Positions 3,109-36,278 of a DNA stretch of 64,000 nucleotides are shown piece after piece (the first letter of the stretch is position 1; every line of letters begins with the position of its first letter). The notes under the pieces are model-generated. The model ran no database searches. It was not told the origin of the DNA and saw nothing but the letters and a program-made list of their open reading frames with translations. The position numbers were made by a program, and so were the translations under genes. Source of the DNA: Squalus acanthias (lineage: Eukaryota). The DNA lies in contig CM059443.1 of the NCBI GenBank assembly GCA_030390025.1, forward strand, positions 50,468,001 to 50,532,000, read 5' to 3'.

Positions 3109-3203
3109 TCAAGCAGCCTCAGTGTTACAATCTGTGAAAACACACTTGCATTCGAGGGGGGGCCGGTTGCGCACCTGCCGTCCATGGTCCGTGCGGTCTC
3201 TGC
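3109..3203 (-). CDS. Gene A terminal coding exon (CRDRTDHGRQVRNRPPLECKCVFTDCNTEAA*), no tyrosine
   Basis: Acceptor ctcctctcttgatatctAG is shared with the B/C terminal exons; the first ~30 nt are homologous, then the sequence diverges. Confidence 0.6.
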
Positions 3204-6200
3204 CTAGATATCAAGAGAGGAGATCACGTTTGATGGGTTCACTTCCAGTGGGGGACAGATAATGAAAGCGGACTGTCTCGTTACATCAGATAAAGCTCCA
3301 GGAGCTTTAGAACAGACACAGTGTTGGCTGAGAGGATTATACTGAAAGATTGCAATTACTTACATTTTACTCACTGAATTTCACTTTTGCCTCCATCACT
3401 AAGAATACAGAAAATTAAACATGTGAAGCATCAGTAACATAAGATTCAAACAATAATAAACATCTGTAAATGGATTTGCTATTTTTAACCCCTGGATTTG
3501 AATCCGTCTCTCTACTCTTCAATTTTCGCTCTCACCATCTCCCATCACTCTCCCTTTCCCTCACTCGCCCTCTATCTTTCCCTCCCTCCTTTCTCTCTCT
3601 CTCTATGTCTGTCTCTCTCACTCTACCCCTCTCTCCATCCCTCCTCCTCTCTCTGGACTGTAAGGGTCATTTAGGAAATGATTTACATTCAGCTTCCTGT
3701 GTCAGCCACACATTAGCCTCCTACAGTTATTAAAGAAATGCAACTGGTAAATGTTTCATTGAATGAGAAAAACTAAACAGAAAGTCTGAATGAAAACTGA
3801 GTGAATCACATCCCTGCCACTACCGATGCTGAGGATCCTTCATAAAAATAAATAACGGGGGGAACTTACTAGATTTAATATAAGTTTTTAAAACGGTAAT
3901 GGAGAAAATAATGGGACTTAAGTTTGACAAATCTCCAGGATCTGATGGCTTCCACCCCAGGGAATTAAAAGAAGCAGGTGAGGAAATTGCAGATACTCTA
4001 GTCATGATCTTCCAAAACTCTCTTGATTCACGAATTGTCCCCTTGGATTGGAATACTGCCAAATGTTACTCCATTATTTCAGCAGGGTGGGAGAGAGAAA
4101 CCAGGAAATTATAGACCTATTCGTCCAACGTCTGTTGTGGGGAAGTTACTAGAATCTGTTACTGGGGACAGAGCAACTGAGCACTTGGACAAATATGAGT
4201 TGACCAGAGAGAGCCAGCATGGATTGGTAAAGGGTATGTCAGGTCTAACTAACCTTGTTGAATTTTATGAGGAGATCACTAACGTGGTAGATAAGGGAGT
4301 GTACATGAATTTTAGATGGACTTCCAGAAGGCATTCAATAATGTTCCACACAAGACACTCTTAGCAAAAATGAAAGCACATGGCTATTGACAAGGCTAGG
4401 GAATTGGTTAGGTGGTTGGAAGCTGAGAGTAGGGATAATGGGTAATATACTCCAATTGGCAGGATGTGACTACTAGTGTCTCCCAGAGATCTGAACTGGG
4501 GCCTCAGATTTTCACTATATTTATAAAAAAAAGACTTAGATAAAGGAATAGAGCGCCAAATATCCAAGGTTGCTGACAACACGGAGTTAGGTGCCACAGT
4601 AAGTAGTGTTGTCAAGGGACGTTGACAGATTAAGTGAGTTGGCAAAACTGGCAGATGGGGTTCAGTGTAGGGAAGTGTGAGGGGATCCACTTTGGACCGA
4701 AGAAAGATAGGTCAGAATATTTTCTAAATGGTGACAAGATAGGAACTGTGGAGGAGCCGAGAGATTTCGGGGTCCAAGTACAGAAATCACTAAAAAGCTA
4801 AAAACAGGGACAAAAAATAATTAAAAAGGCGAATAGAAAGTTAGCTTTATCTCAAGTTAGCTGGAATACAAAAGAGTAGATGTTATGCGACAGTTGTATA
4901 AAGCTTAGGTGAGACCACATCTGGAGTGCTGTATTGAGTTCTGGGCACTGCACCTCAGGAAGGACATACTGGCCTTAGAAGGGGTGATACTGGGGCTAAA
5001 AGGGTTAAATTACGAGGACAGGTTGCAGAGACTAGGCTTGTATTCCCTCGAGTATAGAAGATTAAGGGGTGATCTAATTGAGGTGTTTAAGATGATATAA
5101 GGATTTGATAGGGTGGATAGAGAGAAACTATTTCCTCTGGTGGAGGAGTCTAAAACAAGGCGGCATAACCTTAAAATTAGAGCCAGGCACTTTAGGGGTG
5201 ATGTCAGGAAGCACTTCTTCACACAAAGGGTGGTGGAAATCTGGAACTTGCTCCCCCCAAAAAGCTGTTGAGGCTGAGGGTCAATTGAAAATTTCAGAAC
5301 TGAGATTGGTAGATGTTTATCAGTTAAGGGTATGAAGGCATATGCAACCAAGGCGGGTAAATGGAGTTAGGTCACAGATCAGCAATGATCAAATTGAATG
5401 GCGGAACAGGCTCGAGGGGCTGAATGGCCTCCTCCTGTTCCTATGTCGCTATGGTCACAGTAAATGTGATAAGATCAGAACAATGAATTTAAAAATCATT
5501 GTAATAAGTCTGTACTTAAATATAATTTTCCGGATTTAGATCAAACATTTTAAAGCTCTTGCTTACCCTTGGCAGCTTGCCGTTTCCTTCGGATTATGCA
5601 AAGTGCCCCATCAATGCAAACTAGCACAACCAAGTACAGAACCAAAACACACATACGTATGTCACTGCAGCTGGTGTAAGGACCTGCAGAGGAGAAGCAA
5701 CATTAAGTTCAGCCTGTGCAATCCCGTGTTATATGTACAGCTGATCACACTGGTTACCTGGGCTGAGGAACAGACATTTCTGGTTAGAATCTGGAATAGT
5801 GCAATGGCGAAGGAAGTAAATCAAAGCAACTTCTAACGGCTACAAACTGTACAACTGATCTGGAATCTCTCAGTTTGAATTATTGATATTAAAAGATTCA
5901 CATCATATTCTAGATTGTATCACTTACTTTGAGTATTTGTACGAGTTAAGCTGCTGGTCACTGAGGAGATTCCCGATGTTGAGGTGGGGGTGTCTGAAGT
6001 CTCTGCACTCGCCTCTGTCACAGTAAGGGAGATGTTTGCTGCAATCTTCCAGACAGGTTTCCCTGAATCCTGACCGTGGACAGCACAGAGATACCTCCCA
6101 GTGTCCACCACATCTGCTGAGTGAATAGTAAGGTTGTGAGACTGGCGTCTAGCAGCAAGATTGTCTGAGCTTTGGGCAGAGATTCTTTGTGACGACTTTC

Positions 6201-9200
6201 TGTCCACACAGCAGCGTGTGTTAGAATGTGCCTCATAACCCTCAGTGTGAACAGAGTGCAGACACTTGTTGACGTTTCCAGATCTGATCCAAAACAGAGT
6301 GAAGGCGAGGTTTTTTGTATTCTCAAACTGGCAGGGTAAAGCCACATTTTCTCCCTTTGACACTGTCAGCGACCAGGAGTTTTCTTCAGTAGAAAATATT
6401 TCATCCGAATCTATAAACAACATTGAAAAGAACCTTTGTTACTAATTATTTAGAAGTGCTGTTCCCACATGTTATCCAGCTGTTTGATGTAAGTGTGAGT
6501 CTGTCTGTAACTAGCTGTATTATCAGCAGTGGAGACAGCAGGCGTGGGCCAGGGCCAAATCCTTGTTTGGAATATTTGTCTGATTTTCCCACCGTTAGAT
6601 TAAACATTCCCCAGCTAGAGGCAGATTGTGTAAGATCAGGAAACACTCGGGGACTGAGAGCAAGGAGCGAGAAGACAGGACAAATAATGAAAGATCGAAC
6701 ACACAAAGGCAAAAGACAGGGGCAGACATTAAAGGACAGAGACAAGGGGGGGAGACTTCAAACTCGCTTCTCTGTATCTCGATACCTGGGAATTTTATCC
6801 CCCCCCCCCGCCCCGCCAGATATTTCCCCAATACCTCCCCTGATATCTCCTCCGATACTTCCCCGATCCCTCCCCCGATATTGCCCCAGTACACGTACCA
6901 CTCTGGATTATCACAAAGAACAAGTCGTGGTTTTCACATCCCTCTCCTGACAGTGTGAGCCAGGACGGACACTTCGATGATCCTCTTTCTGTGGAATCCT
7001 GAGCCGAGCAGGTAAATACCGTCGAGTTAACCGTCTTCACATCGAATGTCAGAGACTGAGACTCGTTTGTTCTTCATTTAATTTGCATTTTCTACACTCT
7101 GGCTTACTCTGTTTGTCCAATTAAGACTGATGTTTTCACAAAATTGCATTTTTTTCTGTTTATTCTCACATTTTATTTTGCCCATTTCTGCTCCGAGATC
7201 AGTGAAGCTGCACAAGGTTACTTTATTCCCAGCACCAGTGGGCACGTTGCACTGCAGAGTGGTGACATCTCCTGGTCCTCGGGAGAAGAGATAAGTGGAT
7301 CCTGCAGGGAAAGGGCAGAATCGGATAGAGATAAATAACATTCCACACAGGAAAGATCATTAAACACTCAATGTGAAACAAGCCTCTCCCAGTAAATGAG
7401 CCTAGTGAGACCCCCACCACCCCCTTTACACATTGTGATAGACTGCCCTCCCATTACACAGTCTGAATCCAGTCCACACCACCCCCTCTCCCTGCCTCCA
7501 TCACACAGGCCTGGACAGAGATCCCACCCCCACCATAACACATTCTGATCGAGACCTCACCCCCATCCCCATCATAGCCTGAATAGAGACCCCCCACCCT
7601 TTCACTGAGCCTGACTACAGTCATACATAGTACATAGGTTGAGGTTATTGGAAGTCAATCATCTCAGCTCCAGGACATCGCTGCAGGAGTTCCTCAGGGC
7701 AGTGTCCAAGGCCTAACCATCTTCAGCTGCTTCATCAATGACCTTCCCTCCATCATGAGGTGACACGTGGGACTGTTCACTGATGATTGCACAGTGTTCA
7801 GCTCCATTTCCAATTCCTCAGATAATGAAGCAGTCCGTGCCTGCATGCAGCAAGACCTGGACAACATCCAGGCTTGGGCTGATAAGTGATAAGTAACAGT
7901 CACACCACATAATGACCATCTCCAACAAGAGAGAGCCTAACCACCTGCCCTTGACATTTGATGGCATTACCATCATCGACTCTCCCACCATTAACATCCC
8001 GGGGTCACCATTGACCAGAGACTTAGCTGCAGCAACCACATAAATACTGTGGATACTAGGGCAGGTCAGAGGCTGAGTACTCTGCGGCAAGTGGCTCACC
8101 TGACTCCCCAAAGCCTTTCCACCACCTATAAGGCACAAGTCAGGAGAGTGATGAAATACTCTCCACTTACGTGGATGAGTGCAGCTCCAAAAACACTCAG
8201 GAAACTCAACACCATCCAGGACAAAGCAGTCCACTTGATCGGCTCCCGATCCGTCCCCTTAAACATTCACTCCCTCCACCACTGGCGCACCATGGCTGCA
8301 GTGTGTACCATCTACATGATGTAGGGTTCTCAAAATTCCCACATTCCCCAGAGTTATTAATAAGGGGTACCCTTGACAAAGTGGCTTCTGGACCTCGTGA
8401 CAGAAGCCTGCGACATTGAACAGACAGGCTGCCAAAGGAGGCGGGGCTGGCCTCTACAGACAATGTTGTATATTCGACCTATCTCCAGCCCCATCAAACT
8501 GTTTAGCATTTATACAAAGAATTAAAGGCAACACAAATGAACAACCATCAGACCAGCAATCATCCTCCACTTAACAAATATTTAATATCGTTAAAGGCCA
8601 TCTCCTGCCATTAAATTTAACTACCTTAACAAGCCCACCAGAATTAAACAAAGAAGATTTGGCTGGCAAATAAGGAACAATCGAACAGTATAACTTTAGA
8701 CTGGAACAAGCCGGAGGCTGGAGAGACGAGTTCTACAAGCCGGGGGCTACAGAGACCTATGCTGGACCAAGCAGGAGTTCTAGACAGACAGGCTACAAGC
8801 AGGACAGCTGAAGCACAGGAGTTCTCCAGTACACAGTTCAAGAGAAACAAGACCGTTCAACAAAGAAGGCCAGCGGCTCCAGAAACAGACCGACACGCAA
8901 GAAACCAGAGCAACGGTTCCAGTGACCATCAAACACCTCGAGGCACAAGGGCCTTATGAAACTTTTTACTTCAAAGGACTTTAAACCATATCTCAACTGT
9001 CAAAGGATTCGTTTGGTGAGCATTATCCCTGGTCCTCAAGAGTCTAACTTAGCTAGTAAAGTGGGGTTGGGAGGGGTGAGGTATTGTTCTACTGTCATTT
9101 CCCTCGTTTGTACCGAAGTTAAGATGTTATGTTTCATCTCTGTTCAATAAACACTGGTTTTCCTCGCACCAATCCACGGGTCTGTTTGTTTGTCCTTATC

Positions 9201-11246
9201 GCCGCTCGATAAGTCCTGGGCTCAGAACTAATAAGGGGATAGCGATTCGCAACCGCACAACGGGCAAGGACAGTCCAGGAAAACATAACTGGCTGACCTA
9301 CAAATAAGCCCGAGACAAAAAACCCTTACAATGATAGTACCTCACCAAGGCTTTTACGGCAGTATCTCCCAAACCCCCGACCTTCACCACCTATAAGAAC
9401 AAGGGCAGCAGGTGCTTGGGAACACCATCACCTCCAAGTTTCCTTAAAAGTCGCACAACATTCTGACTTGGAAATATATTGCTGTTCCTTCATTGTCGCT
9501 GGGTCAAAATCCTAGAATTGCCTCCCTAACAGCATTGTGGAGAACCTTCACCATTTGGAGTGCAGAAGAAAGGTCAAACCCAACTGACCTTCTCAATGGC
9601 AACTAGGGATTGGGCAATAAATGCCGAATTGCCAGTGACACCCACATCCCGAAGAAAGATAAAATAAATATGAAGTAATCATCCACTTAATGAGGGAACT
9701 TAATTTAAGACGTGGCATTGAATACTGGTTCCTAACTTTCAGGGAGATTATAATAACTGATAATTGGTGTGAGGACATTAGTTAGTCCTGTAAAAGGAAA
9801 ACATCTGGGTAAATATTATCTTTTTAGTTGGGGTTTCTGTAGAAGGAGGGAATTAGCTGAAGTTGAATGGTGCAGACCAGAGAGATATTTATAATTAAAA
9901 GTATCACTTGATGGAGAGCAATTATATGTAACAAGAGCCGAATTATTTATAAGGTAATGAAGTAGAGTTATACCAATCTCGTTAGCCGAATGGAAAAAGA
10001 GCTCGTTAGTTAGGAAACCAGCTGTTAGCTAAAGTTATCGATAAGGACTCAGTTCAATTAGACTCTCCTTATATGGAGTGGTTTTTCAATGCAGAAATGT
10101 GCAAATTGTCACATAGTCGGAGTGAGGGGTAAGTACAAAAAGTGGCAGAGTGTAATCAGTATTTGGATTCGAAGGGGTTTGATTGGCCTAAAACACTGAA
10201 CATTAACGCGTTTGAGTCGCCAGCCATCAGCTCTTGTAAGTTCTTGTGGCTCTTTGCCAGAATCAACTCACGGCCTCGCTCTCCCCACAGTCCTCCTGTA
10301 TCTTTCACAGCTTCAAATGTTTATCCAATTCTCACTTAAAGATAGAATCATAGAATCATAGAAAGTTACAGCACGGAAGGAGGCCATTTCGGCCCATCAT
10401 GTCTGCACCGGCCAACAAAGAGCTATCCAGTCTAATCCCACTTCCCAGCTCTTGGTCCGTAGCCCTGCAGGTTACAGCATCCCAAGTGCACATCCAAGTA
10501 CTTTTTAAATGTGGTTAGGGTTTCTGCCTCTACCACCCTTTCAGGCAGTGAGTTCCAGACCCCCACAACCGTCTGGGTGAAGAAATTTCCCCTCAAATCC
10601 CCTCTAAACCTTCCACCAATTACTTTAAATCTGTGCCCCCTGGTTTTTGACCCCTCTGCTAAGGGAAATAGGTCCTTTTTGTCCACTTTATCTCGGCCCC
10701 TCATAATTTTATACACCTCAATAAGGTCTCCCCTCAGCCTCCTCTGTTCCAAGGAAAACAAACCCAGCCGATCCAGTCTTTCCTCATAGCTAAGATTCTC
10801 TACTCCCGGCAACATCCTTGCAAATCTCCTCTGTACCCTTTCTAGTGCAATTACATCTTTCCTGTAATGTGGTGACCAGAACTGCACCGCAGTACTCTAG
10901 CTGAGGCCTAACTAGTGTTTTATACAGTTGATAAGATCCAAAGCTCTCTACCTCAACCATTCGCTGTGGTAAAGCATTCCCTGCTCCAACAACCCTCTGT
11001 GTAAAGACATTTCTCCTAACCTCTCTCCTCACTGTCTTAGTGCCATTTTTAAACTGATGACCCATGATTAAACCGTGTTAAAATGCCACAGCAAGGACTG
11101 TGATGCGAGCACATTAAACATATTCACAAGAACACCACTGTTTTATATCCTTATCCTATGCTGAAGATTAACTGAAAGTATTAATCCTTACCTGTAACAT
11201 GTTGGAACAGAAGGAAAAGACCCACAAACACAGCACCGAGCGCCAT
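3109..11246 (-). CDS. Receptor gene A: Ig-superfamily type I membrane receptor, activating-type (265 aa if the frameshifted D1 exon is skipped; possibly a pseudogene)
   Basis: Exons 11246-11192, [7301-6899 frameshifted], 6410-5928, 5683-5567, 3837-3824, 3720-3687, 3203-3109 have canonical GT-AG junctions. Without D1 they total 798 nt in one open frame: signal, V-type Ig, S/T stalk, TM, Tyr-free tail. Confidence 0.75.
3687..3720 (-). CDS. Gene A exon 6: 34-nt micro-exon (EANVWLTQEAE)
   Basis: Acceptor ttctttaataactgtAG, donor T|GTAAAT; homologous to gene B AGDVQLTQVAE. Confidence 0.6.
3824..3837 (-). CDS. Gene A exon 5: 14-nt micro-exon (GSSAS)
   Basis: Homologous to the 22-nt gene B exon; acceptor tttttatgaAG, donor G|GTAGTG. 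Read-through would instead end GSSASVVAGM* at 3806. Confidence 0.55.
3853..5453 (+). mobile_element. Degenerate CR1 LINE in gene A intron 4
   Basis: Fragmented RT ORFs (KSPGSDG, NYRPI, LRGDLIEV) and a 3' UTR; absent from the short equivalent intron of gene B. Confidence 0.85.
5567..5683 (-). CDS. Gene A exon 4: transmembrane exon SPYTSCSDIRMCVLVLYLVVLVCIDGALCIIRRKRQAAK
   Basis: Acceptor tctcctctgcAG, donor G|GTAAGC; 117 nt, phase 1-1; hydrophobic stretch followed by RRKR stop-transfer. Confidence 0.85.
5928..6410 (-). CDS. Gene A exon 3: V-type Ig domain (D2) plus Ser/Thr-rich stalk
   Basis: GENVALPC...LFW...HNLTIHSADVVDTGRYLC V-set motifs; acceptor tttatAG, donor A|GTAAGT; 483 nt, phase 1-1. 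Confidence 0.9.
6899..7301 (-). pseudogene. Gene A exon 2: frameshifted Cys-rich Ig-like D1 exon
   Basis: Acceptor ccctttccctgcAG and donor G|GTACGT intact. It is 403 nt versus 405 nt in gene B (+3, -4, -1 indels), with a premature TAA at 7080-7078. Confidence 0.8.
7640..9660 (+). mobile_element. Old CR1/L2-group LINE RT remnant split by a solo LTR (uninterrupted copy ~33700-34700)
   Basis: GVPQGSV, QQDLDNIQAWADK, IQDKAVHLIG remnants. Confidence 0.75.
8320..9330 (+). mobile_element. Solo LTR, 1011 bp
   Basis: TG...CA ends with a short imperfect inverted repeat (TGTAGGG / CCCTTACA), 4-bp TSD ATGA (8316-8319, 9331-9334), internal AATAAA near 9146; empty site at ~34378 in the duplicate. Confidence 0.85.
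10342..10930 (-). mobile_element. 5'-truncated CR1 (duplicate ~35390-35970)
   Basis: ORF2 C-terminus (QFWSPHYRKD...TRGH) and a (CATAGAAT)n tail. Confidence 0.9.
11192..11246 (-). CDS. Gene A exon 1: signal peptide MALGAVFVGLFLLFQHVT
   Basis: gaaATGG start, hydrophobic 18-aa leader, phase-1 donor CAG|GTAAGG; conserved in gene B. Confidence 0.85.
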
Positions 11247-15705: not shown

Positions 15706-15719
15706 TGATGACCCCTGGG

Positions 15720-18700: not shown

Positions 18701-19340
18701 TCTCCTTCCTATCTTTTGCTTTTATCCTTGTTTCCCTTTCCTCTGTCTCCCTGCTCAGGTTCCCAACCCCCTGCCATTTTAGTTTAAACCCTCCCCCAGA
18801 GCACTAGCAAACACTCCCCCTAGGACATCAGTCCCGGCCCTGCCCAGGTGCAAACCGTCCGGTTTTTACTGGTCCCACCTCCCCCAGAACCGGTTCCAAT
18901 GTCCCAGGAATTTGAATCCCTCCCCCTTGCACCATTCCTCTCGCCACGTATTCATCTGAAATATCCTTCTATTTCTGTTCTGACTACCTTTGAGGTCCTA
19001 TTTTTTAATGTACCTCCTAACTCCGTATATTCTGCTTTTAGGACCTCATCCCCTTTTTTACCTATATTGTTGGAACCTATATGCACCACGACAACTGGCT
19101 GTTCACCCTCCCCTTCCAAAATGTTCTGCAGCCGCTCTGAGACATCCTTGACCCTTGCACCAGGGAGGCAACACACCATCCTGGAATCTCGTTTGCGGCC
19201 GCAGAAATGCCTATCTATTCCCCTTACAATAGAATCCCCTATCACTATAGCTCTACCCTTCTTTTTCCTCCCGTCCTGTGCAGCAGGGCCACCCCTGGTG
19301 CCAGGAAGTTGGCTGCTGTTGCCTTCCTCTGATAAGCTCT
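15720..19340 (-). mobile_element. CR1, 5'-truncated in ORF1, disrupted ORF2 (APE endonuclease and RT)
   Basis: LNARS, ITETWL, MGDFN, FADD motifs with stops and frameshifts. Confidence 0.92.
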
Positions 19341-20704: not shown

Positions 20705-20903
20705 TCGATATTGGCCAGGACACCGGGGAGAACTCCCCTGCTCTTCTTCGAAATAGTGCAACGGGATCTTTTACATCACCTGAGAGAGCAGACGGGTCTC
20801 AGTTTAACGTCTCATCCGAAAGACGTCACCTCTGACAGTGCAGCACTCCCTCAGTACTGTACTGGAGTGTCAGCCTGGATGATGTGCTCAGGTCTCTGGA
20901 GTG
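20705..20903 (-). mobile_element. Deu-domain SINE fragment (SacSINE1/AmnSINE-like); duplicate ~45716-46163
   Basis: Reverse complement reads gagggagtgctgcactgtcagaggtgacgtctttcggatgagacgttaaac, which I recognise from memory as the DeuSINE core. Confidence 0.65.
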
Positions 20904-22255: not shown

Positions 22256-22506
22256 TCAGGGTTCCTCCATTTTAGCATAAATAGGATTTTCTTCCATTTT
22301 TAACGGGCCAGGTCGTGGATCATCTTCCTCCAGCTGGGACTGTGTCACCGCGTCTACCGGGCAGCCTATCAAAGAATAAATCTGCTCATTGGACAAAGCA
22401 ACGGGATCCTCCTTACTGTCCTCTTTGGGCTGTGATTGGCCGTCTGGTTTGAGTTCAGTCGCTGAAGAGGTTTCAACCTGCCGTCCATGGTCCGTGTGGT
22501 CTCTGC
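22256..22506 (-). CDS. Gene B terminal exon with EQIYSLI and EENPIYAKM motifs
   Basis: 251 nt, phase-1 acceptor, open to TGA; conserved in copy C with 3 aa changes. Confidence 0.8.
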
Positions 22507-28500: not shown

Positions 28501-31500
28501 GTGCCTTAACTTTACACGCTAATCTCTTATGCGGGACCTTATCAAAAGCCTTTTGGAAGTCCAAATACACCACATCCACTGGTTCTCCCTTATCTATTTT
28601 ACCAGTTACATCCTCAAAAAATTCCAGTCGATTAGTCAAGCATGATTTACCTTTTGTAAATCCATGTTGACTTTGTCCGATCCTGTCACTGTTTTCCAAG
28701 TGCTCAGCTATTACATCTTTTACATCTTTTATAATGGACTCTAGCATTTTCCCCACTACCGATGTCTGTAATTCCCTGTTTTCTCTCTACCACCCTTTTT
28801 GAATAGTGGGGTAACATTAGCTTCCCACCAATCCATGGGTACTGTGCCAGATTCCATCGAATGTTTGAAGATGATCAGCAATGCATCTACTATTTCTAGG
28901 GCCACTTCCTTAAGTACCCTAGGATGTAGATTATCAGGCCCTGGGGATTTATCGGCCTTCAATCCCTTCAATTTCCCTAACACCATTTCCCTACAAATAC
29001 TGATTTCTTTCAGTTCCTCCCTTTCATCAGACCCTATGTTCCCCAACATCTCTGGGAGGTTATCTGTGTCCTCCTTTGTGAAGACAGAACCAAAATATGC
29101 ATTTAATTGGTCTTACATTTCTTTGTTCCCCATTATAAGTTCCCCTGATTCTGACTGCAAGGGACCTACGCTTGACTTCACCAATCTTTTTCTCTTCACA
29201 TATCTATAAAAGCTTTTACAGTCAGTTTTTATGTTCCCTGCAAGCTTACTCTCATATTCTATTTTCCCCTTCTTAATTAATCCCTTTGTCCTCCTTTGTT
29301 GAATCTTAAACTGCTCCCAATCCTCAGGGTTACTGCTTTTTCTGGCCAATTTATATGCCCTCTCCTTGGATCTTATCCTATCCCTAATTTCCCTTGTTAG
29401 CCACTGTTGAGTCACCCTTTTTGTTTTATTCTTATGCCAAACTGGGATGAACAAATTCTGTAGTTCGTCCATGCGGTCTTTGAATGTTTGCCATTGCCTA
29501 TCCACCGTCAACCCTTTGAGTGACATTCCCCAATCAATCCTACCCAACTCGCACCTCATACCACCGTAGTTTCCTTTATTTAAATTCAGGACCCTAGTCT
29601 CTGAGTCAACTACTTCACTCTCCATCCTAATGAAGAATTCTATCATATTATGATCGCTCTGACCCAAGGGGCCTCGCACAACAAGATTGCTAATTAATCC
29701 TTTCTCATTGCATAATACCCAGTCTAAGATGGCCTGATCTCTGGTTGGTTCCTCGACATATTGTTCCAGGAAACCATCCCGTAAACACTCCAGGAATTCC
29801 TCCTCCATAGTATTGTTACTAATTTGGTTAGCCCAATCTATATGTAGATTAAAGTCACCCATGATGACTGCTGTGCCCTTATTGCACGCTTCTCTAATTT
29901 CCCTTTTAATGCCATCCCCAACCTCCGCATTACTGTTTGGAGGTCTTTTTATCACTCCCACTAACGTTTTCTGCCCCTTGTTATTTCTCAGTTCAACCCA
30001 TACAGATTCCACATCATCAGAGCTAATATCCTTCCTTTCAATTGTGTTAATCCCCTCTTTAACCAACAATGCTACCCCACCTCCCTTTCCTTTTTGCCTA
30101 TCTTTCCTGAATATTGAGTACCCTGGATGTTGAGTTCCCAGCCTTGGCCACCATGGAGCCGTGTTTCGGTAATCCCAATCAAATCATATTCGTTTACCTC
30201 TATTTGCGCAGCTAATTCATCCACCTTGTTCCGAATGCTCCTTGCATTAAGACACAAAGCCTTCAGGCTTGTTTTTTTAACGCTCTTAGACCTATTAGAA
30301 TTAGTATTTACTGTGGCCATGTTTGATTTAAACCATTGTTTTCTCTGACTGCCACTTTTGTTTTTCTCCTTCCTATCTTTTGCTTTTATCCTTGTTTCCC
30401 TTTCCTCTGTCTCCCTGCTCAGGTTACCAACCCCCTGCCATTTTAGTTTAAACCCTCTCCCAGAGCACGAGCAAACACTCCCCCTAGGACATCGGTCCCG
30501 GCCCTGCCCAGGTGTAGACCGTCCGGTTTGTACTGGTCCCACCTCCCCCAGAACCGGTTCCAATGCCCCAGGAATTTGAATCCCTCCCCCTTGCACCATT
30601 CCTCTAGCCACGTATTCATGTGAAATATCCTTCTATTTCTACTCTGACTAGCACGTGGCACTGGTAGCAATCCTGAGATTACTACCTTTGAGTTCCTATT
30701 TTTTAATTTACCTCCTAACTCCCTATATTCTGCTTTTAGGACCTCATCCCGTTTTTTACCTATATTGTTGGTACCTATATGCACCACGACAACTGGCTGT
30801 TCACCCTCCCCTTCCAAAATGCTCTGTAGCCGCTCTGTGACATCCTTGACCCTTGCACCAGGGAGGCAACATACCATCCTGGAGTCTCGTTTGCGGCCGC
30901 AGAAACGCCTATCTATTCCCCTTACAATAGAATCCCCTATCACTATAGCTCTCCCACTCTTTTTCCTCCCATCCTGTGCAGCAGAACCACCAACGGTGCT
31001 AGGAAGTTGGCTGCTGCTGTCTTCCCCTGATAAGCCATCTCCCTCAACAATATCCAAAGCGGTATATCTGTTTGAGAGGGGGATGGCCACAGGGGACCCC
31101 TGCACTACCTGCCTGCACCTATTACTCTGCCTGGTGGTCACCCATTCCCTTCCAAACAGTACACATGCTCTGTAGAGTCAGGCTTTGGGCCAGTGCTCTC
31201 CATTCCTTCACCAGGCCTTGGCTGGCTCGATGGCATTGGAACTCTCGTCACCGAGTACGCAACATGCTCGTTGTCATCGCTCTGATCCCTTCTGGGAACC
31301 ACAGAGTACGGGAAACCTAGACAGAAGGACGAGTAGACGATGTGTGCTTTTAGTTTCAACTCTCAAAGGGACAGGCTCGGAAGAGCTGGGCAGTAATTCT
31401 AGTCACTTACATTCAGCCACCTGTGTCAGCTGCACATCACCAGCCCTACAGTTAGCAAAGAAAAGCAACCTGTAAATGTCCCATTAAATGAGGAAAACTA

Positions 31501-34500
31501 TGCAGAAAGTCTGCCCGAAAACTGAACGAATCCCATCCCTACCTGGGTCCTGGTGCTGAGGATCCTTCACAACACATACCATAAGATTGGAAAGATAAAT
31601 TTAAAAATCTTTGTAAGGAGTCTGCACTTACAATTTTCTAGATTTAGAGCAAACATTTTAAAGCACTTGCTTACCTTTGGCAGATAGTCGTTTCCTTCGG
31701 ATTATGCAAAGTACCCCAACAATGCAAATGATCACAACCGCACACGCTATCGCTACTTTCACAGGTGTGGCAGTGACTGGACCTGCAGAGGAGAAGCAAC
31801 ATTAAGTTCAGTCTGTGCAATCCCGTGTTATATGTACAGCTGATCACACTGGTTACCTGGGCTGAGGAACAGACATTTCTGGTTAGAATCTGGAATAGTG
31901 CAATGGCGGAGGAAGTAAATCAAAGCAACTTATAACGGCTACAAACTGTACGACTGATCTGGAATCTCTCTGTTTGAATTATTGATATTAAAAGATTCAC
32001 ATCATATTCTAGATTGCATCACTTACTTTGAGTATTTGTACGAGTTAAGCTGCTGGTCACTGAGGAGATTCCAGATGTTGAGGTGGGGGTGTCTGAAGTC
32101 TCTGCACTCGCCTCTGTCACAGTAAGGGAGATGTTTGCTGCAATCTTCCAGACAGGTTTCCCTGAATCCTGACTGTGGACAGCACAGAGATTCCTCCCAG
32201 TGTCCACCACATCCGCTGAGTGAATAGTAAGGTTGTGAGACTGGTGTCTAGCAGCAAGATTGTCTGAGCTTTGGTTAGAGATTCTTCGTGACGACTTTCT
32301 ATCCACACAGCAGCGTGTGTTAGAATGTGCCTTATAATTCTCAATGCGGACAGAGTGCAGACACTTGTTGATGTTTCCAGATCTGATCCAAAACAGAGTG
32401 AAGACGAGGTTTTTTGTATTCTCAAACTGGCAGGGTAAAGTCACATTCACTCCCTTTGACACTGTCAGCGACCAGGAGTTTTCTTCAGTAGAAAATATTT
32501 CATCCGAATCTATAAACAACATTGACAAGAACCTTTGTTACTAATTATTTAGAAGTGCTGTTCCCACATGTTATCCAGCTGTTTGATGTAAGTGTGAGTC
32601 TGTCTGTAACTAGCTGTATTATCAGCAGTGGAGACAGCAGGCGTGGGCCAGGGCCAAATCCTTGTTTGGAATATTTGTCTGATTTTCCCACCGTTAGATT
32701 AAACATTCCCCAGCTAGAGGCAGATTGTGTAAGATCAGGAAACACTCGGGGACTGAGAGCAAGGAGTGATAAGACAGGACAAATAATGAAAGATCGAACA
32801 CACAAAGGCAAAAGACAGGGTCAGACATTAAAGGACAGAGACAAGGGGGGGAGACTTCAAACTCGCTTCTCTGTATCTCGATACCTGGGCATTTTATCCC
32901 CCCCCCCCCCCCGCAGATACTTCCCCGATCCCTCCCCCGATATTGCCCCAGTACACGTACCACTCTGGATTATCACAAAGAACAAGTCGTGGTTTTCACA
33001 TCCCTCTCCTGACAATGTGAGCCAGGACGGACACTTCGATGATCCTCTTTCTGTGGAATCCTGAGCCGAGCAGGTAAATACCGTCAAGTTAATCGTCTTC
33101 ACATCGAATGTCAGAGACTGAGACTCCGTTTGTTCTTCATTTAATTTGCATTTTCTGCACTCTGGCTTACTCTGCCTGTTTGTCCAATTAAGACTGATAT
33201 TTTCACAAAATTGCATTTCCTTCTCTTTATTCTGACATGTATTGTCAATTTCTGCTCCGAGATCAGTGAAGCTGCACAAGGTGACTTCATCCCCAGCACC
33301 AGTGGGCACGTTGCACTGCAGAGTGGTGACATCTCCTGGTCCTCGGGAGAAGAGATAAGTGGATCCTGCAGGGAAAGGGCAGAATCGGATAGAGATAAAT
33401 AACATTCTACACAGGAAAGATCATTAAACACTCAATATGACACAAGCATCTCACAGTAAATGAGCCTAGATAGACCCCCACCACCCCCTTTACACATTGT
33501 GATAGACTGCCCTCCCATTACACAGTCTGAATCCACTCCACACCACCCCCTCTCCCTGCCTCCATCACACAGGCCTGGACAGAGATCCCACCCCCACCAT
33601 AACACATTCTGATCGAGACCTCACCCCATCCCCATCATAGCCTGAATAGAGACCCCCCACCCTTTCACTGAGCCTGACTACAGTCATACATAGTACATAG
33701 GTTGAGGTTATTGGAAGTCAATCATCTCAGCTCCAGGTCATCGCTCCATGAGTTCATCAGGGCAGTGTCCAAGGCCCAACCATCTTCAGCTGCTTCATCA
33801 ATGACCTTCCCTCCATCATGAGGTGACACGTGGGACTGTTCACTGATGATTGCACAGTGTTCAGCTCCATTTCCAATTCCTCAGATAATGAAGCAGTCCG
33901 TGCCTGCATGCAGCAAGACCTGGACAACATCCAGGCTTGGGCTGATAAGTGATAAGTAACAGTCACACCACATAATGACCATCTCCAACAAGAGAGAGCC
34001 TAACCACCTGCCCTTGACATTTGATGGCATTACCATCATCGACTCTCCCACCATTAACATCCCGGAGTCAACATTGACCAGAGACTTAGCTGCAGCAACC
34101 ACATAAATACTGTGGATACTAGGGCAGGTCAGAGGCTGGGTACTCTGCGGCAACTGGCTCACCGGCTCCCCAAAACCTTTCCACCACCTATAAGGCACAT
34201 GTCAGGAGAGTGATGAAATACTCTCCACTTACGTGGATGAGTGCAGCTCCAAAAACACTCAGGAAACTCAACACCATCCAGGACAAAGCAGTCCACTTGA
34301 TCGGCTCCCTATCCGTCCCCTTAAACATTCACTCCCTCCACCACTGGCTCACCATGGCTGCAGTGCGTACCATCTACATGATAGTACCTCACCAAGGCTT
34401 TTACGGCAGTATCTCCCAAACCCCTGACCTTCACCACCTATAAGAACAAGGGCAGCAGGTGCTTGGGAACACCATCACCTCCAAGTTTCCTTAAAAGTCG

Positions 34501-36278
34501 CACAACATTCTGACTTGGAAATATATTGCTGTTCCTTCATTGTCGCTGGGTCAAAATCCTAGAATTGCCTACCTAACAGCATTGTGGAGCACCTTCACCA
34601 TTTGGAGTGCAGAAGAAAGGCCAAACCCAACTGACCTTCTCAATGGCAACTAGGGATTGGGCAATAAATGCCGGAATTGCCAGTGACACCCACATCCCGA
34701 AGAAAGATCAAATAAATATGAAGTAATCATCCACTTAATGAGGGAACTTAATTTAAGACGTGGCATTGAATACTGGTTCCTAACTTTCAGGGAGATTATA
34801 ATAACTGATAATTGGTGTGAGGACATTAGTTAGTCCTGTAAAAGGAAAACTTCTGGGTAAATATTATCTTTTTAGTTGGGGTTTCTGTAGAAGGAGGGAA
34901 TTAGCTGAAGTTGAATGGTGCAGACCAGAGAGATATTTATAATTAAAAGTATCACTTGATGGAGAGCAATTATATGTAACAAGAGCCGAATTATTTATAA
35001 GGTAATGAAGTAGAGTTATACCAATCTCGTTAGCCGAATGGAAAAAGAGCTCGTTATTTAGGAAACCAGCAGTTAGGTAAAGTTATCGATAAGAACTCAG
35101 TTCAATTAGACTCTCCTTATATGGAGTTGTTTTTCAATGCAGAAATGTGCAAATTGTCACATAGTCGGAGTGAGGGGTAAGTACAAAAAGTGGCAGAGTG
35201 TAATCAGTATTTGGATTCGAAGGGGTTTGATTGGCCTAAAACACTGAACATTAACGCGTTTGAGTCGCCAGCCATCAGCTCTTGTAAGTTCTTGTGGCTC
35301 TTTGCCAGAATCAACTCACGGCCTCGCTCTCCCCACAGTGCTCCTGTCTCTTTCACAACTTCAAATGTTTATCCAATTCTCACTTAAATGATAGAATCAT
35401 AGAATCATAGAAAGTTACTGCACGGAAGCAGGCCATTTCGGCCCATCGTGTCTGCGCCGGCCAACAAAGAGCTATCCAGCCTAATCCCACTTCCCAGCTC
35501 TTGGTCCGTAGCCCTGCAGGTTACAGCATCCCAAGTGCACATCCAAGTACTTTTTAAATGTGGTTAGGGTTTCTGCCTCTACCACCCTTTCAGGCAGTGA
35601 GTTCCAGACCCCCACAACCGTCTGGGTGAAGAAATTCCCATCAAATCCCCTCTAAACCTTCCACCAATTACTTCAAATCTGTGCCTCCTGGTTTTTGACC
35701 CCTCTGCTAAGGGAAATAGGTCCTTTTTGTCCACTTTATCTCGGCCCCTCATCATTTTATACACCTCAATAAGGTCTCCCCTCAGCCTCCTCTGTTCCAA
35801 GGAAAACAAACCCAGCCGATCCAGTCTTTCCTCATAGCTAAGATTCTCTACTCCCGGCAACATCCTTGCAAATCTCCTCTGTACCCTTTCTAGTGCAATT
35901 ATATCTTTCCTGTAATGTGGTGACCAGAACTGCACGCAGTACTCTAGCTGAGGCCTAACTAGTGTTTTATACAGTTGATAAGATCCAAAGCTCTCTGCCT
36001 CAACCATTCGCTGTGGTAAAGCATTCTCTGCTCCAACAACATTTCTCCTAACCTCTCTCCTCACTGTCTTAGTGCCATTTTTAAACTGATGACCCATGAT
36101 TAAACCGTGTTAAAATGCCACAGCAAGGACTGTGATGCGAGCACATTAAACATATTCACAAGAACACCACTGTTTTATATCCTTATCCTAAGCTGAAGAT
36201 TAACTGAAAGTATTAATCCTTACCTGTAACATGTTGGAACAGAAGGAAAAGACCCACAAACAAAGCACCGAGCGCCAT
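22256..36278 (-). CDS. Receptor gene B: two-Ig type I membrane receptor with Tyr-motif tail (452 aa skipping exon 7, or 428 aa ending in exon 7)
   Basis: Exons 36278-36224, 33365-32961, 32509-32027, 31782-31675, 31564-31543, 31445-31411, then 31316-31138 or 22506-22256; canonical GT-AG junctions, all in frame. Confidence 0.8.
22850..23253. repeat. CT/CTGT-rich degenerate microsatellite running into an N gap (duplicate 48100-48560; shorter tract 3510-3655)
   Basis: Direct observation; gaps at 23254-23432 and 48329-48512. Confidence 0.9.
24287..24308 (-). pseudogene. Probable displaced 3' remnant of gene B exon 7 with donor G|GTAAGC (copy C equivalent 58787-58808)
   Basis: Directly abuts the 3' tail of the CR1 whose 5' end interrupts exon 7; GAAG occurs on both flanks. 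Confidence 0.5.
24732..27793 (-). mobile_element. Nested 5'-truncated CR1 with an uninterrupted ORF2
   Basis: (AGAAACAT)n tail; empty site at ~59237 in the duplicate. Confidence 0.92.
24828..27764 (-). CDS. CR1 ORF2, APE endonuclease and reverse transcriptase, 978 aa
   Basis: Single open frame with LNARS, TETW, GDFN, SDH, PQGSVLGP and FADD. Confidence 0.92.
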   Translation of the reverse strand: MQSETNVRRVRNNRGRPSKQRQETQRAILNHKSKRTKDVNKTSLKALCLNARSIRNKVDELTVQIDVNGYDVIGITETWLQNNQGWELNIQGYSTFRKDRIKGKGGGVALLVKEEINAIARKDISLEDVESIWVELQNTKGQKTLVGVVYRPPNSSSEVGEGMKQEIRGACKKGTAVIMGDFNMHIDWATQTGSNTVEEDFLECLRDGFLNQYVEEPTRGEAILDWVLCNEEGLISNLVVRGPLGKSDHSMVEFYIRMEKETVKSETMVQNLNKGNFEGMRRELARLNWQAIFKGLSVEGQWQTFRDRMDELQQLYIPVWHKNKKGKVAQPWLTREIRDNIKTKEVAYKLARSSSKPGDWENFKTQQRRTKGLIRAGKIKYERKLAENIKMDCKSFYKYVKRKRLVKTNVGPLQSETGEVVMGNKEMADQLNKYFGSVFTVEDTHNLPEIKGVRGSGKREELREILISREKVLGKLMGLKAEKSPGPDGLHPRVLKEVALEIVDALTIIFQHSLDSGSVPMEWRVANVTSLFKKGGREKAGNYRPVSLTSVVGKMMEAIIKDVITDHLESGDMIGPSQHGFVKGKSCLTNLLEFFEDVSNRVDRGEPVDVVYLDFQKAFDKVPHKRLVSKVKAHGIGGNVLTWIENWLAHRKQRVGVNGYFSEWQAVTSGVPQGSVLGPQLFTLYINDLDEGIKCNISKFADDTKLGGSVNNEEDARRLQSDLDRLGEWANVWQMKYNVDKCEVIHFGGKNREADYYLNGGRLGKGDEQRDLGVMVHQSLKVGMQVQQAVKKANGMMAFIARGFEYRSREVILQLYRALVRPHLEYCAQFWSPNLRKDILAIEGVQRRFTRLIPGMAGLTYQERLGQLNLYPLEFRRMRGDLIETFKILTGLDKLDAGRMFPMVGKTRTRGHSLRIKGKPFRTELRRNFFTQRVVNLWNSLPQKVVEASSLNIFKRELDITLTTRGIKGYGEKAGMGY
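31138..31316 (-). CDS. Gene B exon 7 (5' part): Tyr-rich cytoplasmic exon CFPYSVV...VAYSVT...HVYCLE, running into a CR1 that supplies the stop codon
   Basis: Acceptor tccttctgtctAG follows exon 6 after a 94-nt intron, is in frame and encodes three Tyr; CR1 ORF1 sequence begins near 31148. Confidence 0.7.
31411..31445 (-). CDS. Gene B exon 6: 35-nt micro-exon (AGDVQLTQVAE)
   Basis: ttttctttgctaactgtAG acceptor, T|GTAAGT donor. Confidence 0.7.
31543..31564 (-). CDS. Gene B exon 5: 22-nt micro-exon (GSSAPGPR)
   Basis: gaAG acceptor, CAG|GTAGGG donor; required to put exon 6 in an open frame. Confidence 0.65.
31675..31782 (-). CDS. Gene B exon 4: transmembrane exon SPVTATPVKVAIACAVVIICIVGVLCIIRRKRLSAK
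   Basis: 108 nt, phase 1-1, ctgcAG and G|GTAAGC; uncharged 19-aa core. Confidence 0.85.
32027..32509 (-). CDS. Gene B exon 3: V-type Ig domain D2 plus Ser/Thr stalk
   Basis: 483 nt, phase 1-1; 13 aa differences from gene A; DTGRNLC replaces DTGRYLC. Confidence 0.9.
32961..33365 (-). CDS. Gene B exon 2: atypical Cys-rich Ig-like domain D1
   Basis: Open 405-nt phase 1-1 exon; GDVTTLQC (B strand), SLTFDVKTINLTVFTC (E-F strands), DLFFVIIQS (G strand); 9 Cys. Confidence 0.75.
36224..36278 (-). CDS. Gene B exon 1: signal peptide MALGALFVGLFLLFQHVT
   Basis: 55 nt, phase-1 donor CAG|GTAAGG. Confidence 0.85.

What the first reader, a model, noticed from the sequence alone, without database searches (positions are those of the whole stretch)
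3109..36278. Unannotated paired activating/inhibitory Ig-superfamily receptor system hidden among CR1 repeats
Seen: two adjacent same-strand genes share almost identical signal, D1, D2 and stalk exons but differ from the TM exon onward. A has charged TM residues and a Tyr-free tail; B has an uncharged TM core and up to five cytoplasmic Tyr. Established: this contrast defines paired receptor families such as LILR/PIR, KIR, CD300, SIRP, CD200R and fish NITR/LITR. Inference: this is a paired leukocyte receptor family whose Cys-rich ectodomain matches none of those families as I know them. The ORF track shows only fragments because of short exons.
Basis: partly seen in the sequence, partly recalled or inferred. 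Interest (0 to 1): 0.9.

Follow-up and report, generated by a model that had tools for sequence, protein, structure and literature searches.

The report
Shark paired two-V-domain receptor genes
The window holds damaged tandem copies of a shark gene family encoding cell-surface receptors in two matched forms, one with a charged membrane anchor and short tail and one with a long tyrosine-rich tail; the family reaches from sharks to echidna and has no name.

Summary
Two minus-strand genes lie in a ~25 kb tandem duplication, and the 3' part of a third lies beside them. Signal, D1 and D2+stalk exons are 96-98% alike. The TM exon is only 72% alike: copy A has a juxtamembrane Cys, an Arg and an Asp; copy B has no charge. 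B's introns are confirmed by canonical splice joints in contigs of 2 to 4 of 4 public runs (2 studies), from close paralogues or relatives rather than these exact copies. The N gap (23254-23432) is intronic.

Relatives exist in 11 named shark species and in ray-finned fishes, lungfish, amphibians, reptiles, kiwi and echidna. Nearly all are labelled 'uncharacterized'. Both forms occur in five other shark species. Ectodomains group by species and TM exons by type, which is the paired-receptor signature. D1 is a diverged nine-Cys V-like fold and D2 a canonical V-set domain. No named family fits.

Both copies here are damaged. A's D1 exon has two frameshifts. B, and the third copy, have a 6.8 kb CR1-like insertion inside the Tyr-rich exon and a lost acceptor at the next exon. 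B also has Asn in place of the core Tyr of D2. 'Inhibitory' and 'leukocyte' remain untested.

Earlier scan notes flag more copies upstream; I could not check them.

The parts
11192..11246 (-). Gene A signal-peptide exon (18 codons + 1 nt, donor CAG|GTAAGG)
   Evidence: 54 of 55 nt identical to B's
6899..7301 (-). Gene A D1 exon, 403 nt. Relative to B it has +3, -4 and -1 nt, which gives two frameshifts and an in-frame stop
   Evidence: homologous proteins align to it in three different frames
5928..6410 (-). Gene A D2 (V-set) + Ser/Thr stalk exon, 483 nt, phase 1-1, intact
   Evidence: (V-set E 2.7e-08)
5567..5683 (-). Gene A TM exon: juxtamembrane Cys, Arg at the outer border, Asp in the helix, then a basic stop-transfer stretch
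3683..3842 (-). Gene A degenerate remnant of the two small tail exons that B still has (79% alike to 31407-31569)
3364..3398 (-). Gene A tail exon (e8), acceptor TTAG intact. Read in the A-type frame after the TM exon it gives a 10-residue Tyr-free end with stop at 3369..3367
   Evidence: P0080 and P0084 end the same way and P0003 closely alike
36224..36278 (-). Gene B signal-peptide exon
   Evidence: joint 33364>36223 in 3 of 4 runs
32961..33365 (-). Gene B D1 exon, 405 nt, open, nine Cys, diverged V-like fold
   Evidence: joint 32509>32961 in 4 of 4 runs
32027..32509 (-). Gene B D2 (V-set) + stalk exon; Asn replaces the nearly invariant Tyr of the Y-x-C motif
31675..31782 (-). Gene B TM exon, uncharged core
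   Evidence: joint 31563>31674 in 2 of 4 runs
31543..31564 (-). Gene B small tail exon s1 (22 nt)
   Evidence: joint 31444>31542 in 3 of 4 runs
31411..31445 (-). Gene B small tail exon s2 (35 nt)
   Evidence: joint 31314>31409 in 3 of 4 runs
31153..31316 (-). Gene B Tyr-rich exon, 5' half (three conserved Tyr). It reads on into the insertion for four codons and then stops
   Evidence: all 3 listed contig pieces over it end at 31153
24310..31152 (-). 6,843-nt nested CR1-like LINE insertion, same orientation as the gene. It carries an open 978-aa endonuclease + reverse transcriptase ORF (24828-27764) and a GDSL-esterase ORF1 (30443-31141)
24287..24309 (-). Gene B Tyr-rich exon, 3' half (7 codons + 2 nt, donor GG|GTAAGC)
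23254..23432 (.). Assembly gap inside the intron between the Tyr-rich exon and e8, next to CT-rich simple sequence; not filled
22667..22701 (-). Gene B tail exon e8; the acceptor dinucleotide reads CG where gene A has AG
22256..22506 (-). Gene B last coding exon e9 (two conserved Tyr, one in an N-P-x-Y motif), open to its stop
47506..47951 (-). Third copy (gene C), e8 (47951..47917, acceptor also CG) and e9 (47756..47506, open)
58787..58809 (-). Gene C 3' half of the Tyr-rich exon, abutting the same CR1-like 3' end. Its upstream exons lie beyond the window

Best explanation
The window is part of a tandem array, in units of about 25 kb, of a shark multigene family of type I membrane receptors. 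The ectodomain is two V-like Ig domains: a diverged nine-Cys D1 and a canonical V-set D2, followed by a Ser/Thr stalk.

The family comes in two gene types.
- B-type has an uncharged TM helix and a tail of about 190 residues. The tail is built from five further exons and has five conserved Tyr positions, the first ITIM-like and the last in an N-P-x-Y context.
- A-type has a juxtamembrane Cys, an Arg at the outer TM border and an Asp or Asn deep in the helix. It has lost the three exons after the TM exon. The TM exon therefore splices straight to exon e8, which is then read in another frame and stops after ten Tyr-free residues.

Inferred, not shown: the A-type signals through an adaptor chain bound by its charged TM residues, and the B-type signals through phosphorylated tail tyrosines, as in KIR, LILR, CD300 or SIRP pairs. 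Gene conversion keeps the ligand-binding exons of the two types alike within a species, and stops at the TM exon.

The copies in this window are probably not working genes as assembled. A has two frameshifts in D1. B and C share a CR1-like insertion inside the Tyr-rich exon and a lost e8 acceptor. B also has a core Tyr-to-Asn change. The expressed members seen in RNA are close paralogues or orthologues.
For: Shown by tools:
- Duplication geometry.
- Exon models with canonical splice sites.
- Five of B's introns seen as CT..AC joints in 2 to 4 of 4 runs from 2 studies.
- A second contig class, in 4 of 4 runs, leaves B's TM exon exactly where A and B stop aligning.
- 57 relatives at E<=1e-3, 25 at E<=1e-10; 23 shark proteins at E<=1e-10.
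- A-type and B-type proteins both found in Heptranchias, Mustelus, Heterodontus, Pristiophorus and Scyliorhinus torazame.
- D2 identity is 90-96% between types within a species against 59-80% between species. TM exon identity is 53-84% among A-types against 50-62% between A and B within a species.
- In the D2 tree, A pairs with B in all 5 species that have both types in the tree, with support 96-100. The A label needs 6 changes for 6 rows.
- The A-type end is shared by P0080, P0084, P0003 and window A.
- Four Tyr positions are conserved in 12 of 12 shark B-type proteins and the first in 11 of 12.
- D1 model pLDDT 80; the 50 rows listed are Ig domains, nearly all V-type, at Z 6.0-7.2. D2 model pLDDT 87, V domains at Z 12.6-14.4.
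- Lesions.
- Exons are more diverged than introns: 36 of 883 against 35 of 1715 aligned nt, Fisher p=0.003. dN/dS in the D2 Ig part is about 1.1.
Against: - No contig is identical to either window copy. Contigs are 94-99% alike and carry +18 nt in the TM exon, so expression of these exact genes is not shown.
- The runs are labelled RNA only as a guess, and organism and tissue are coded.
- B's own first Tyr motif has Phe at -2. Canonical ITIMs occur in only 5 of 12 shark B-type proteins and no ITSM in any of the 12, so 'inhibitory' is an analogy.
- An acidic TM residue beside the Arg is unusual for adaptor-coupled receptors.
- No adaptor, ligand or cell type was tested.
- The A-type identity of the second contig class is inferred from where its alignment breaks, not read from its letters.
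- A's frameshifts could be assembly errors; the -1 is in a GG run.
- Species-wise clustering could also come from repeated recent duplication, although that would need the same TM and tail type to arise again in each species.
Confidence: 0.7

Rival explanations
1. The window holds an intact, working activating/inhibitory pair. A would be expressed with or without D1. B would keep an inhibitory tail through use of either side of the CR1 insertion.
For: - All other exons and splice sites of A and B are intact.
- Skipping A's D1 exon would keep the frame, since both neighbouring exon borders are phase 1.
- A GG|GTGACC site four codons into the insertion has the same phase as the lost donor.
- B's last exon is still open.
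Against: - A's D1 has two frameshifts and a stop.
- B's e8 acceptor is CG in both B and C, so even a rescued splice has no normal landing site. The nearest upstream AG brings an in-frame stop (read).
- B has Asn at the Tyr that is at least 90% conserved in 40 sequences.
- 15 of 19 variant sites in expressed contigs carry A's base, not B's.
- All 3 listed contig pieces over the exon stop at the insertion border.
Confidence: 0.1
2. The family is not an immune paired-receptor system. It would be an adhesion or other signalling molecule, with the short-tailed form only a truncated or decoy variant.
For: - Outside sharks, the members I read have an uncharged TM helix and one long-tail type.
- The conserved tail motifs do not meet the ITIM or ITSM consensus in most shark members.
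- Tissue of expression is unknown.
- The nearest structures include adhesion V domains such as CAR, nectin, MPZ and sodium-channel beta subunits.
Against: - The A-type Cys, Arg and Asp/Asn TM features are kept in six shark species, with the Asp replaced by Asn in Mustelus.
- Ectodomains are homogenised between the types while the signalling exons stay apart.
- Ectodomain exons diverge faster than introns, with dN/dS about 1.
- The family forms tandem arrays containing pseudogenes.
- Taken together this matches what is written about immune paired receptors (PMC3022915, passages read; abstracts listed).
Confidence: 0.15
3. Part of the tandem structure is an assembly artefact: B and C would be two haplotypes of one gene placed in tandem.
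For: - B and C units are 97.2% alike over 11.5 kb.
- They carry the same insertion and the same CG acceptor.
- Each has an N gap at the matching place.
Against: - C's intron holds a block of about 9.4 kb (48860-58232) that B lacks.
- The units also differ by indels.
- A and B differ in gene type, so at least two real genes remain.
- Tandem family members are also predicted in other sharks, several proteins on one contig.
Confidence: 0.05

Closest known systems
Paired activating/inhibitory Ig-superfamily receptors (KIR, LILR/PIR, CD300/MAIR, SIRP, PILR, Siglec-11/16, CEACAM1/3)
   Same: - Linked genes with near-identical ectodomains.
- One form has charged TM residues and a short tail; the other has an uncharged TM and a long Tyr-bearing tail.
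- Ectodomains are homogenised within a species.
- Tandem array with pseudogenes.
   Different: - No sequence-level membership in any of these families.
- The domain make-up is V-like + V-set, not C2 domains or V-C1-C1.
- The A-type TM has an Asp or Asn as well as an Arg.
- The short tail arises by reading a shared exon in another frame.
- A canonical ITIM is present in only 5 of 12 shark B-type proteins.
Teleost NILT and skate/zebrafish MDIR (CD300/TREM/NKp44-like V-domain receptors)
   Same: One or two V-type Ig domains; multigene clusters with transposons and pseudogenes; long tails with Tyr motifs (PMC3022915, passages; PMC3031540, passages).
   Different: - NILT V domains are defined by a CX3C, CX6C or CX7C motif and have a separate connecting-peptide exon.
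- Here D2's extra Cys lie 22 residues after the first Cys and as a CC pair 16 residues further on, and the stalk is part of the D2 exon.
- A CD300/pIgR-like protein (P0010) was only a weak multi-domain hit.
PD-1 / CD28-type and other single V-set receptors with a stalk
   Same: D2 + stalk + TM resembles V + stalk receptors. PD-1 is the first Foldseek match for D2 (E 7.6e-07, 24% identity). It also appears in the sequence search at E 0.24 and weaker. The C'-to-D extra disulfide position resembles CD28/CTLA-4, which is my recollection and was not tested.
   Different: PD-1 is tied with many other V domains: TCR, sodium-channel beta4, CD96, CD8, CAR. Those receptors have no second N-terminal domain, and there is no sequence-level membership.
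CD226 (DNAM-1), a receptor with two V-set domains
   Same: Two V-like domains, a TM and a Tyr-bearing tail. CD226's second domain aligns to D2 in the profile search (E 1.6e-06). A 'CD226 antigen-like' cluster is among the nearest by language-model features (score 0.95).
   Different: The match is no better than those to TCR alpha, VISTA or sodium-channel beta1 in the same list. With single proteins it is E 0.18. D1 has no sequence match to anything solved.

Membership tests
Paired activating/inhibitory receptor system (functional class) | Linked genes with highly similar ectodomains and different signalling ends | tested here: met
   SP, D1 and D2 are 96-98% alike; the TM exon is 72% alike; the tails differ. 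The same holds in five other shark species.
Paired activating/inhibitory receptor system (functional class) | One form with a charged TM residue and a short tail without signalling motifs | tested here: met
   A has an Arg and an Asp in or at the TM, and an 18-residue Tyr-free cytoplasmic part by homology. This is conserved in 6 species, with Asn for Asp in Mustelus.
Paired activating/inhibitory receptor system (functional class) | Other form with an ITIM (S/I/V/L-x-Y-x-x-I/V/L, as quoted in PMC3022915) | tested here: inconclusive
   Window B has Phe at -2 of its first Tyr motif. A canonical ITIM is present in 5 of 12 shark B-type proteins, and an ITSM in none of the 12.
Paired activating/inhibitory receptor system (functional class) | Association of the short form with an ITAM adaptor; recruitment of phosphatases by the long form; expression on leukocytes | not testable with these tools
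   Needs bench work. The runs found were coded, with no tissue given.
KIR / LILR / PIR (leukocyte receptor complex) | Ectodomain of C2-type Ig domains | tested here: not met
   D2 is V-set (Pfam E 2.7e-08; Z 12.6-14.4 to V domains). D1's best matches are V-type at Z 6.0-7.2; LILRB1 and PirB appear only among tied rows.
CD300 / TREM / NKp44 / NILT / MDIR | V domain with an extra closely spaced Cys pair (CX3C to CX7C, PMC3022915) | tested here: not met
   D2's extra Cys lie 22 residues after the first Cys and as a CC pair 16 residues further on. There is no CX3-7C.
SIRP (V-C1-C1) and CD200R (V-C2) | N-terminal V domain followed by C-type domains | tested here: not met
   The membrane-proximal domain is the canonical V-set domain. 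No C1 or C2 Pfam or PDB sequence match specific to these families.
Teleost NITR | V domain with a J-like motif followed by an I-type domain; known from bony fish (recalled) | tested here: inconclusive
   I read no F-G-x-G J-like motif in D2's last strand, and the domain order differs. The NITR definition is recalled, not taken from a call.
Unnamed gnathostome family (this one) | Signal peptide, Cys-rich V-like D1, V-set D2 with an extra Cys and a CC pair, stalk, TM, and a tail with E-C-x-P-Y-(A/S)-V | tested here: met
   Consensus of 33 and 40 aligned members. Window B encodes each part.

The most novel reading that the evidence does not exclude
This would be an ancient, still unnamed two-V-domain receptor family, present from sharks to monotremes. 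In sharks it expanded into a KIR/LILR-like paired activating/inhibitory array. The ectodomains evolve in concert, and the activating form arose by losing three tail exons, so that a shared exon is read in a second frame. It could be the sharks' counterpart of the rapidly evolving NK or myeloid receptor clusters of mammals, for which cartilaginous fish have no described equivalent apart from the skate MDIRs.
Probability: 0.4. Interest if true: 0.75.

Novelty: new variant of a known kind. Interest (0 to 1): 0.6.

Why it matters
Paired receptors are central to NK-cell and myeloid-cell control in mammals. In cartilaginous fish, six literature searches brought up only the skate MDIRs.

- **A concrete family to test.** It has both gene types in six shark species and spliced transcripts, so adaptor pairing and ligand can be tested directly.
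- **A wide, unnamed family.** It also appears in fishes, amphibians, reptiles, a kiwi and an echidna without ever having been named. No therian mammal was among the 43 hits whose names I looked up, which is not proof of absence.
- **A simple route between signalling types.** Losing three exons makes a shared exon read in a second frame. That converts a long-tailed receptor into a short-tailed, charged-TM one.

Tried and rejected
**Searches that gave nothing specific**
- Pfam on D1: no family at E<=1.
- PDB sequence search on D1: 0 matches at E<=10.
- Foldseek of the D1 model against PDB: nothing at E<=0.001.
- Profile and single-protein searches against PDB: only generic V-domain matches.
- ESM Atlas: only generic V-set clusters, with CD226-like and CD83 as leads.

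**Literature.** Six searches found no paper on this family:
- searches used descriptive terms;
- searched MDIR;
- searched 12 LOC gene identifiers and found 0 papers.

Subscription journals and supplements are outside what I could see, so this is not proof that nothing is in print. For two papers I read passages only: PMC3022915 and PMC3031540. All other papers named were seen only as search listings with the start of the abstract.

**Readings I rejected**
- NILT or CD300-type membership, because the Cys pattern and exon structure differ.
A-type proteins P0080 and P0084 end the same way in exon e8 and P0003 closely alike.
It was wrong and was corrected.

**Things I could not do**
- I could not read the letters of the contigs beyond the laid stretch. 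So the A-type nature of the second contig class, and what follows 31153 in the expressed B-type contigs, are both inferred.
- I did not fold or search a joined (spliced) model.


Full report
**What is there.** A self-comparison of the window shows a tandem duplication with a period of about 25 kb. 9327-20861 matches 34375-45871 at 97.2%. 5469-8323 matches 31581-34386 at 93-97%. 20858-23041 matches 46118-48290. A block at 1541-3474 recurs at 20151-22777 and 45167-48027 at 88-93%.

The receptor exons are on the minus strand. Only two copies of the D1 and D2 exons lie in the window. Three copies of the last tail exons do, so the window holds gene A (11246 down to about 3364), gene B (36278 down to 22256) and the 3' part of a gene C (58809 down to 47506).

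**The gap.** The N run 23254-23432 lies between B's exon pieces 24309..24287 and 22701..22667, so it is in an intron and no reading frame crosses it. It adjoins CT-rich simple sequence. Its two flanks are collinear with gene C, which has its own N run at the matching place, 48329-48512. I did not fill or look up either gap.

**Exon models.** Homologous shark proteins (below) were aligned to the window and the splice sites were read directly.

Gene B:

| Exon | Coordinates | Note |
|---|---|---|
| Signal | 36278..36224 | |
| D1 | 33365..32961 | 405 nt |
| D2 + Ser/Thr stalk | 32509..32027 | 483 nt |
| TM | 31782..31675 | |
| s1 | 31564..31543 | small tail exon |
| s2 | 31445..31411 | small tail exon |
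| Tyr-rich exon, 5' half | 31316..31153 | |
| Tyr-rich exon, 3' half | 24309..24287 | |
| e8 | 22701..22667 | |
| e9 | 22506..22256 | last coding exon |

Gene A: signal 11246..11192, D1 7301..6899, D2+stalk 6410..5928, TM 5683..5567, and e8 3398..3364. The Ig and TM exons are phase 1-1. There is no separate stalk exon.

**A against B.**
- Signal exon: 54 of 55 nt identical.
- D1: 96.0% identical.
- D2+stalk: 463 of 483 nt identical.
- The three introns compared: 97.5-98.7% identical.
- TM exon: 78 of 108 aligned nt identical plus a 9-nt indel, with the change concentrated in its 5' half.

A's TM exon encodes a juxtamembrane Cys, an Arg at the outer border and an Asp two thirds into the helix. 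B's core has no charge.

The ectodomain exons are more diverged than the introns: 36 of 883 against 35 of 1715 aligned nt, odds ratio 2.0, Fisher p=0.003. In the Ig part of D2, 15 of 19 changes alter the protein, giving dN/dS about 1.1.

**RNA.** One search found eight runs, labelled RNA only as a guess and coded for organism and study. I laid four of them (two studies) on 31100-36300 at 90% likeness.

Joints with CT..AC ends, which are GT..AG on the gene's strand, sit at the predicted borders:

| Joint | Runs showing it |
|---|---|
| 33364>36223 | 3 of 4 |
| 32509>32961 | 4 of 4 |
| 31563>31674 | 2 of 4 |
| 31444>31542 | 3 of 4 |
| 31314>31409 | 3 of 4 |

The D2-to-TM junction appears with small offsets in X1 and X2. 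So the contigs are spliced RNA and the B-type exon model is right.

They are not these exact genes, however.
- The pieces differ from B by 1-6%. For example, one contig has 4 of 404 letters different in D1 and 13 of 222 in D2.
- The B-type contigs have 18 extra nt in the TM exon.
- Of 19 variant sites listed in D2, 15 carry gene A's base.

All 3 listed pieces over the Tyr-rich exon end at 31153 and do not enter the insertion.

A second contig class, in 4 of 4 runs, runs from the end of D2 to 31739. That is the point where A and B become alignable again inside the TM exon. I read this class as A-type transcripts, but I could not see its letters.

**Lesions.**
- A's D1 exon is 403 nt. Relative to B it has +3, -4 and -1 nt, an in-frame stop follows, and homologous proteins align to it in three frames.
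- B's Tyr-rich exon is split exactly between two codons by a 6,843-nt nested CR1-like element (24310-31152) in the gene's orientation. The element has an open 978-aa endonuclease/reverse-transcriptase ORF and a GDSL-esterase ORF1. Read-through adds four codons and a stop.
- Gene C has the same insertion at 58787-58809, so the insertion is older than the B/C duplication.
- In B and C the dinucleotide before e8 is CG, where A has AG.
- B has Asn at the Tyr of the D-x-G-x-Y-x-C motif, which is at least 90% conserved in a 40-sequence alignment. The expressed contigs have the Tyr codon.

**The family.** An exhaustive HMMER search with B's D2 exon found 57 proteins at E<=1e-3, 25 at E<=1e-10 and 4 at E<=1e-30. 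A word-based search with the Heptranchias B-type protein found 23 shark proteins at E<=1e-10.

Names were looked up for 30 of the 57, and the 23 came with names.
- Sharks: Heptranchias, Pristiophorus, Carcharodon, Cetorhinus, Scyliorhinus torazame and S. canicula, Mustelus, Heterodontus, Hemiscyllium, two Chiloscyllium species, Rhincodon.
- Ray-finned fishes: sturgeon, gar, salmonids and other teleosts.
- Others: lungfish, frogs and salamanders, lizards, snake, turtle, alligator, kiwi and echidna.

Nearly all are 'uncharacterized' or 'hypothetical'. Four labels look like artefacts of automatic naming: 'serine-rich adhesin for platelets-like', 'putative GPI-anchored protein pfl2', 'Programmed cell death 1 ligand 1' (one Komodo dragon record) and 'UNVERIFIED_CONTAM'.

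By D2 the window's species groups with Pristiophorus and Heptranchias, so it is probably a squalomorph shark.

**Domains.**
- D2 is a V-set domain: Pfam E 2.7e-08 for A and 6.1e-05 for B. The model has pLDDT 87, with V domains of many families at Z 12.6-14.4. PD-1 is first by Foldseek at E 7.6e-07 and 24% identity, but tied with others.
- D1 has no Pfam or PDB sequence match. Its model, built from a 33-sequence alignment, has pLDDT 80. The 50 rows listed in the exhaustive structural search are Ig domains, nearly all V-type, at Z 6.0-7.2 with 79-96 residues aligned. Foldseek gave nothing at E<=0.001.

So D1 is a diverged V-like domain with nine Cys, not a new fold. The Z values are in the range the tool calls 'middling'.

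**Two gene types across sharks.** A-type proteins occur in Heptranchias, Mustelus (Asn for Asp), Heterodontus, Pristiophorus and S. torazame, beside B-type proteins in the same species. They have the juxtamembrane Cys, the Arg, the Asp and a short tail.

| Comparison | D2 Ig part | TM exon |
|---|---|---|
| A vs B within a species | 90-96% | 50-62% |
| Between species | 59-80% | 53-84% (A-types with each other) |

The Heterodontus B row rests on a fragment.

In a maximum-likelihood tree of D2 (18 rows), A pairs with B in each of the 5 species that have both types in the tree, with support 96-100. The A label needs the maximum of 6 changes. I left the Heterodontus B fragment out of the tree.

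This is what gene conversion of the ligand-binding exons, stopping at the TM exon, would give. Repeated independent origin of the same TM and tail would be the alternative.

**How the short tail arises.** In Pristiophorus and S. torazame, and closely in Mustelus, the A-type protein ends a few residues after the TM exon with the same short sequence. That sequence is exon e8 read one frame away from the B-type reading. Window A has this exon with an intact AG acceptor and a stop at 3369..3367. The two small exons are degenerate (79% alike) and the Tyr-rich exon is missing. Losing three exons therefore changes the frame of a shared exon and turns a long tail into an 18-residue Tyr-free one.

**Tail motifs.** In 12 shark B-type proteins, four of the five Tyr positions are conserved in 12 of 12 and the first in 11 of 12. 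The first is a canonical ITIM in 5 of 12; window B and Pristiophorus have Phe at -2, and others have Phe at +3. No ITSM was found in any of the 12. The last Tyr is in an N-P-x-Y context. Across all vertebrate members the consensus E-C-x-P-Y-A-V is visible.

**Mechanism.** Shown: the architecture, the two types, their conservation, the homogenised ectodomains and spliced transcripts. Inferred by analogy:
- PMC3022915 (passage read) states that activating receptors pair with DAP12, CD3-zeta or FcR-gamma through a TM Arg or Lys, and that inhibitory ones carry ITIMs.
- From my own recollection, an Arg near the outer TM border followed by Met or Leu is typical of FcR-gamma-coupled receptors such as LILRA, NKp46, Fc-alpha-RI and GPVI.
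- On that basis the A-type would signal through an adaptor and the B-type through tail phosphotyrosines.
- The sign of B's signal is open.

**Novelty.** Six literature searches found no description of the family, and 12 LOC identifiers gave 0 papers. NILT and MDIR are the nearest described fish families and differ in their defining Cys motif and exon structure. I file this as a new family of a known kind of system.

**Limits.**
- Runs were coded, so tissue and species are unknown.
- Contigs cannot show levels of expression.
- Supplements were not consulted.

Earlier notes of this scan report further copies 22-64 kb upstream of the window, and other paired-type families elsewhere in this genome. 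I could not check them.

Noticed in passing
window 48860-58232: A block of about 9.4 kb that gene B's matching intron lacks. It is built of long inverted repeats (48972-50527 vs 55232-53677 at 90%; 51152-53682 vs 57916-55383 at 92.5%) flanked by arrays of a repeat of about 37 bp at 50527-50921 and 57935-58231. It could be a foldback-type element or an assembly artefact.
   Followed up: no
window 24828-27764 and 30443-31141: The CR1-like LINE inside gene B has an uninterrupted 978-aa endonuclease + reverse transcriptase ORF, and a separate ORF with a GDSL esterase domain. Very similar copies (93-96%) lie at 15721-19337, 40755-44353 and 58819-60384, so the element may be recently active.
   Followed up: partly
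window 22667-22701, 3364-3398, 47917-47951: One 35-nt exon is used in two reading frames in the family: as an internal tail exon in the long form, and as the stop-bearing last coding exon in the short form. Both frames are open in all three window copies.
   Followed up: yes
window 23254-23432 and 48329-48512: The two N gaps sit at matching places of the B and C units, next to CT-rich simple sequence. The assembler evidently failed at the same repeat twice.
   Followed up: partly
window 32192 (B, D2 exon): B alone has Asn for the core Tyr of the V-domain Y-x-C motif. Gene A has the Tyr codon, and so do the contigs of all four runs.
   Followed up: yes
proteins P0001, P0021, P0089: Public names of three family members look like annotation artefacts: 'serine-rich adhesin for platelets-like' (Heptranchias, a model with the D1-D2 unit doubled), 'Programmed cell death 1 ligand 1' (Varanus) and 'putative GPI-anchored protein pfl2' (Scyliorhinus canicula).
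   Followed up: no
window 31703-31713 (B, TM exon): Expressed B-type contigs in three runs carry 18 extra nt here, a tandem repeat of six TM codons. The Pristiophorus B-type proteins also have the longer TM stretch, while Heptranchias and the other species have the shorter one.
   Followed up: partly
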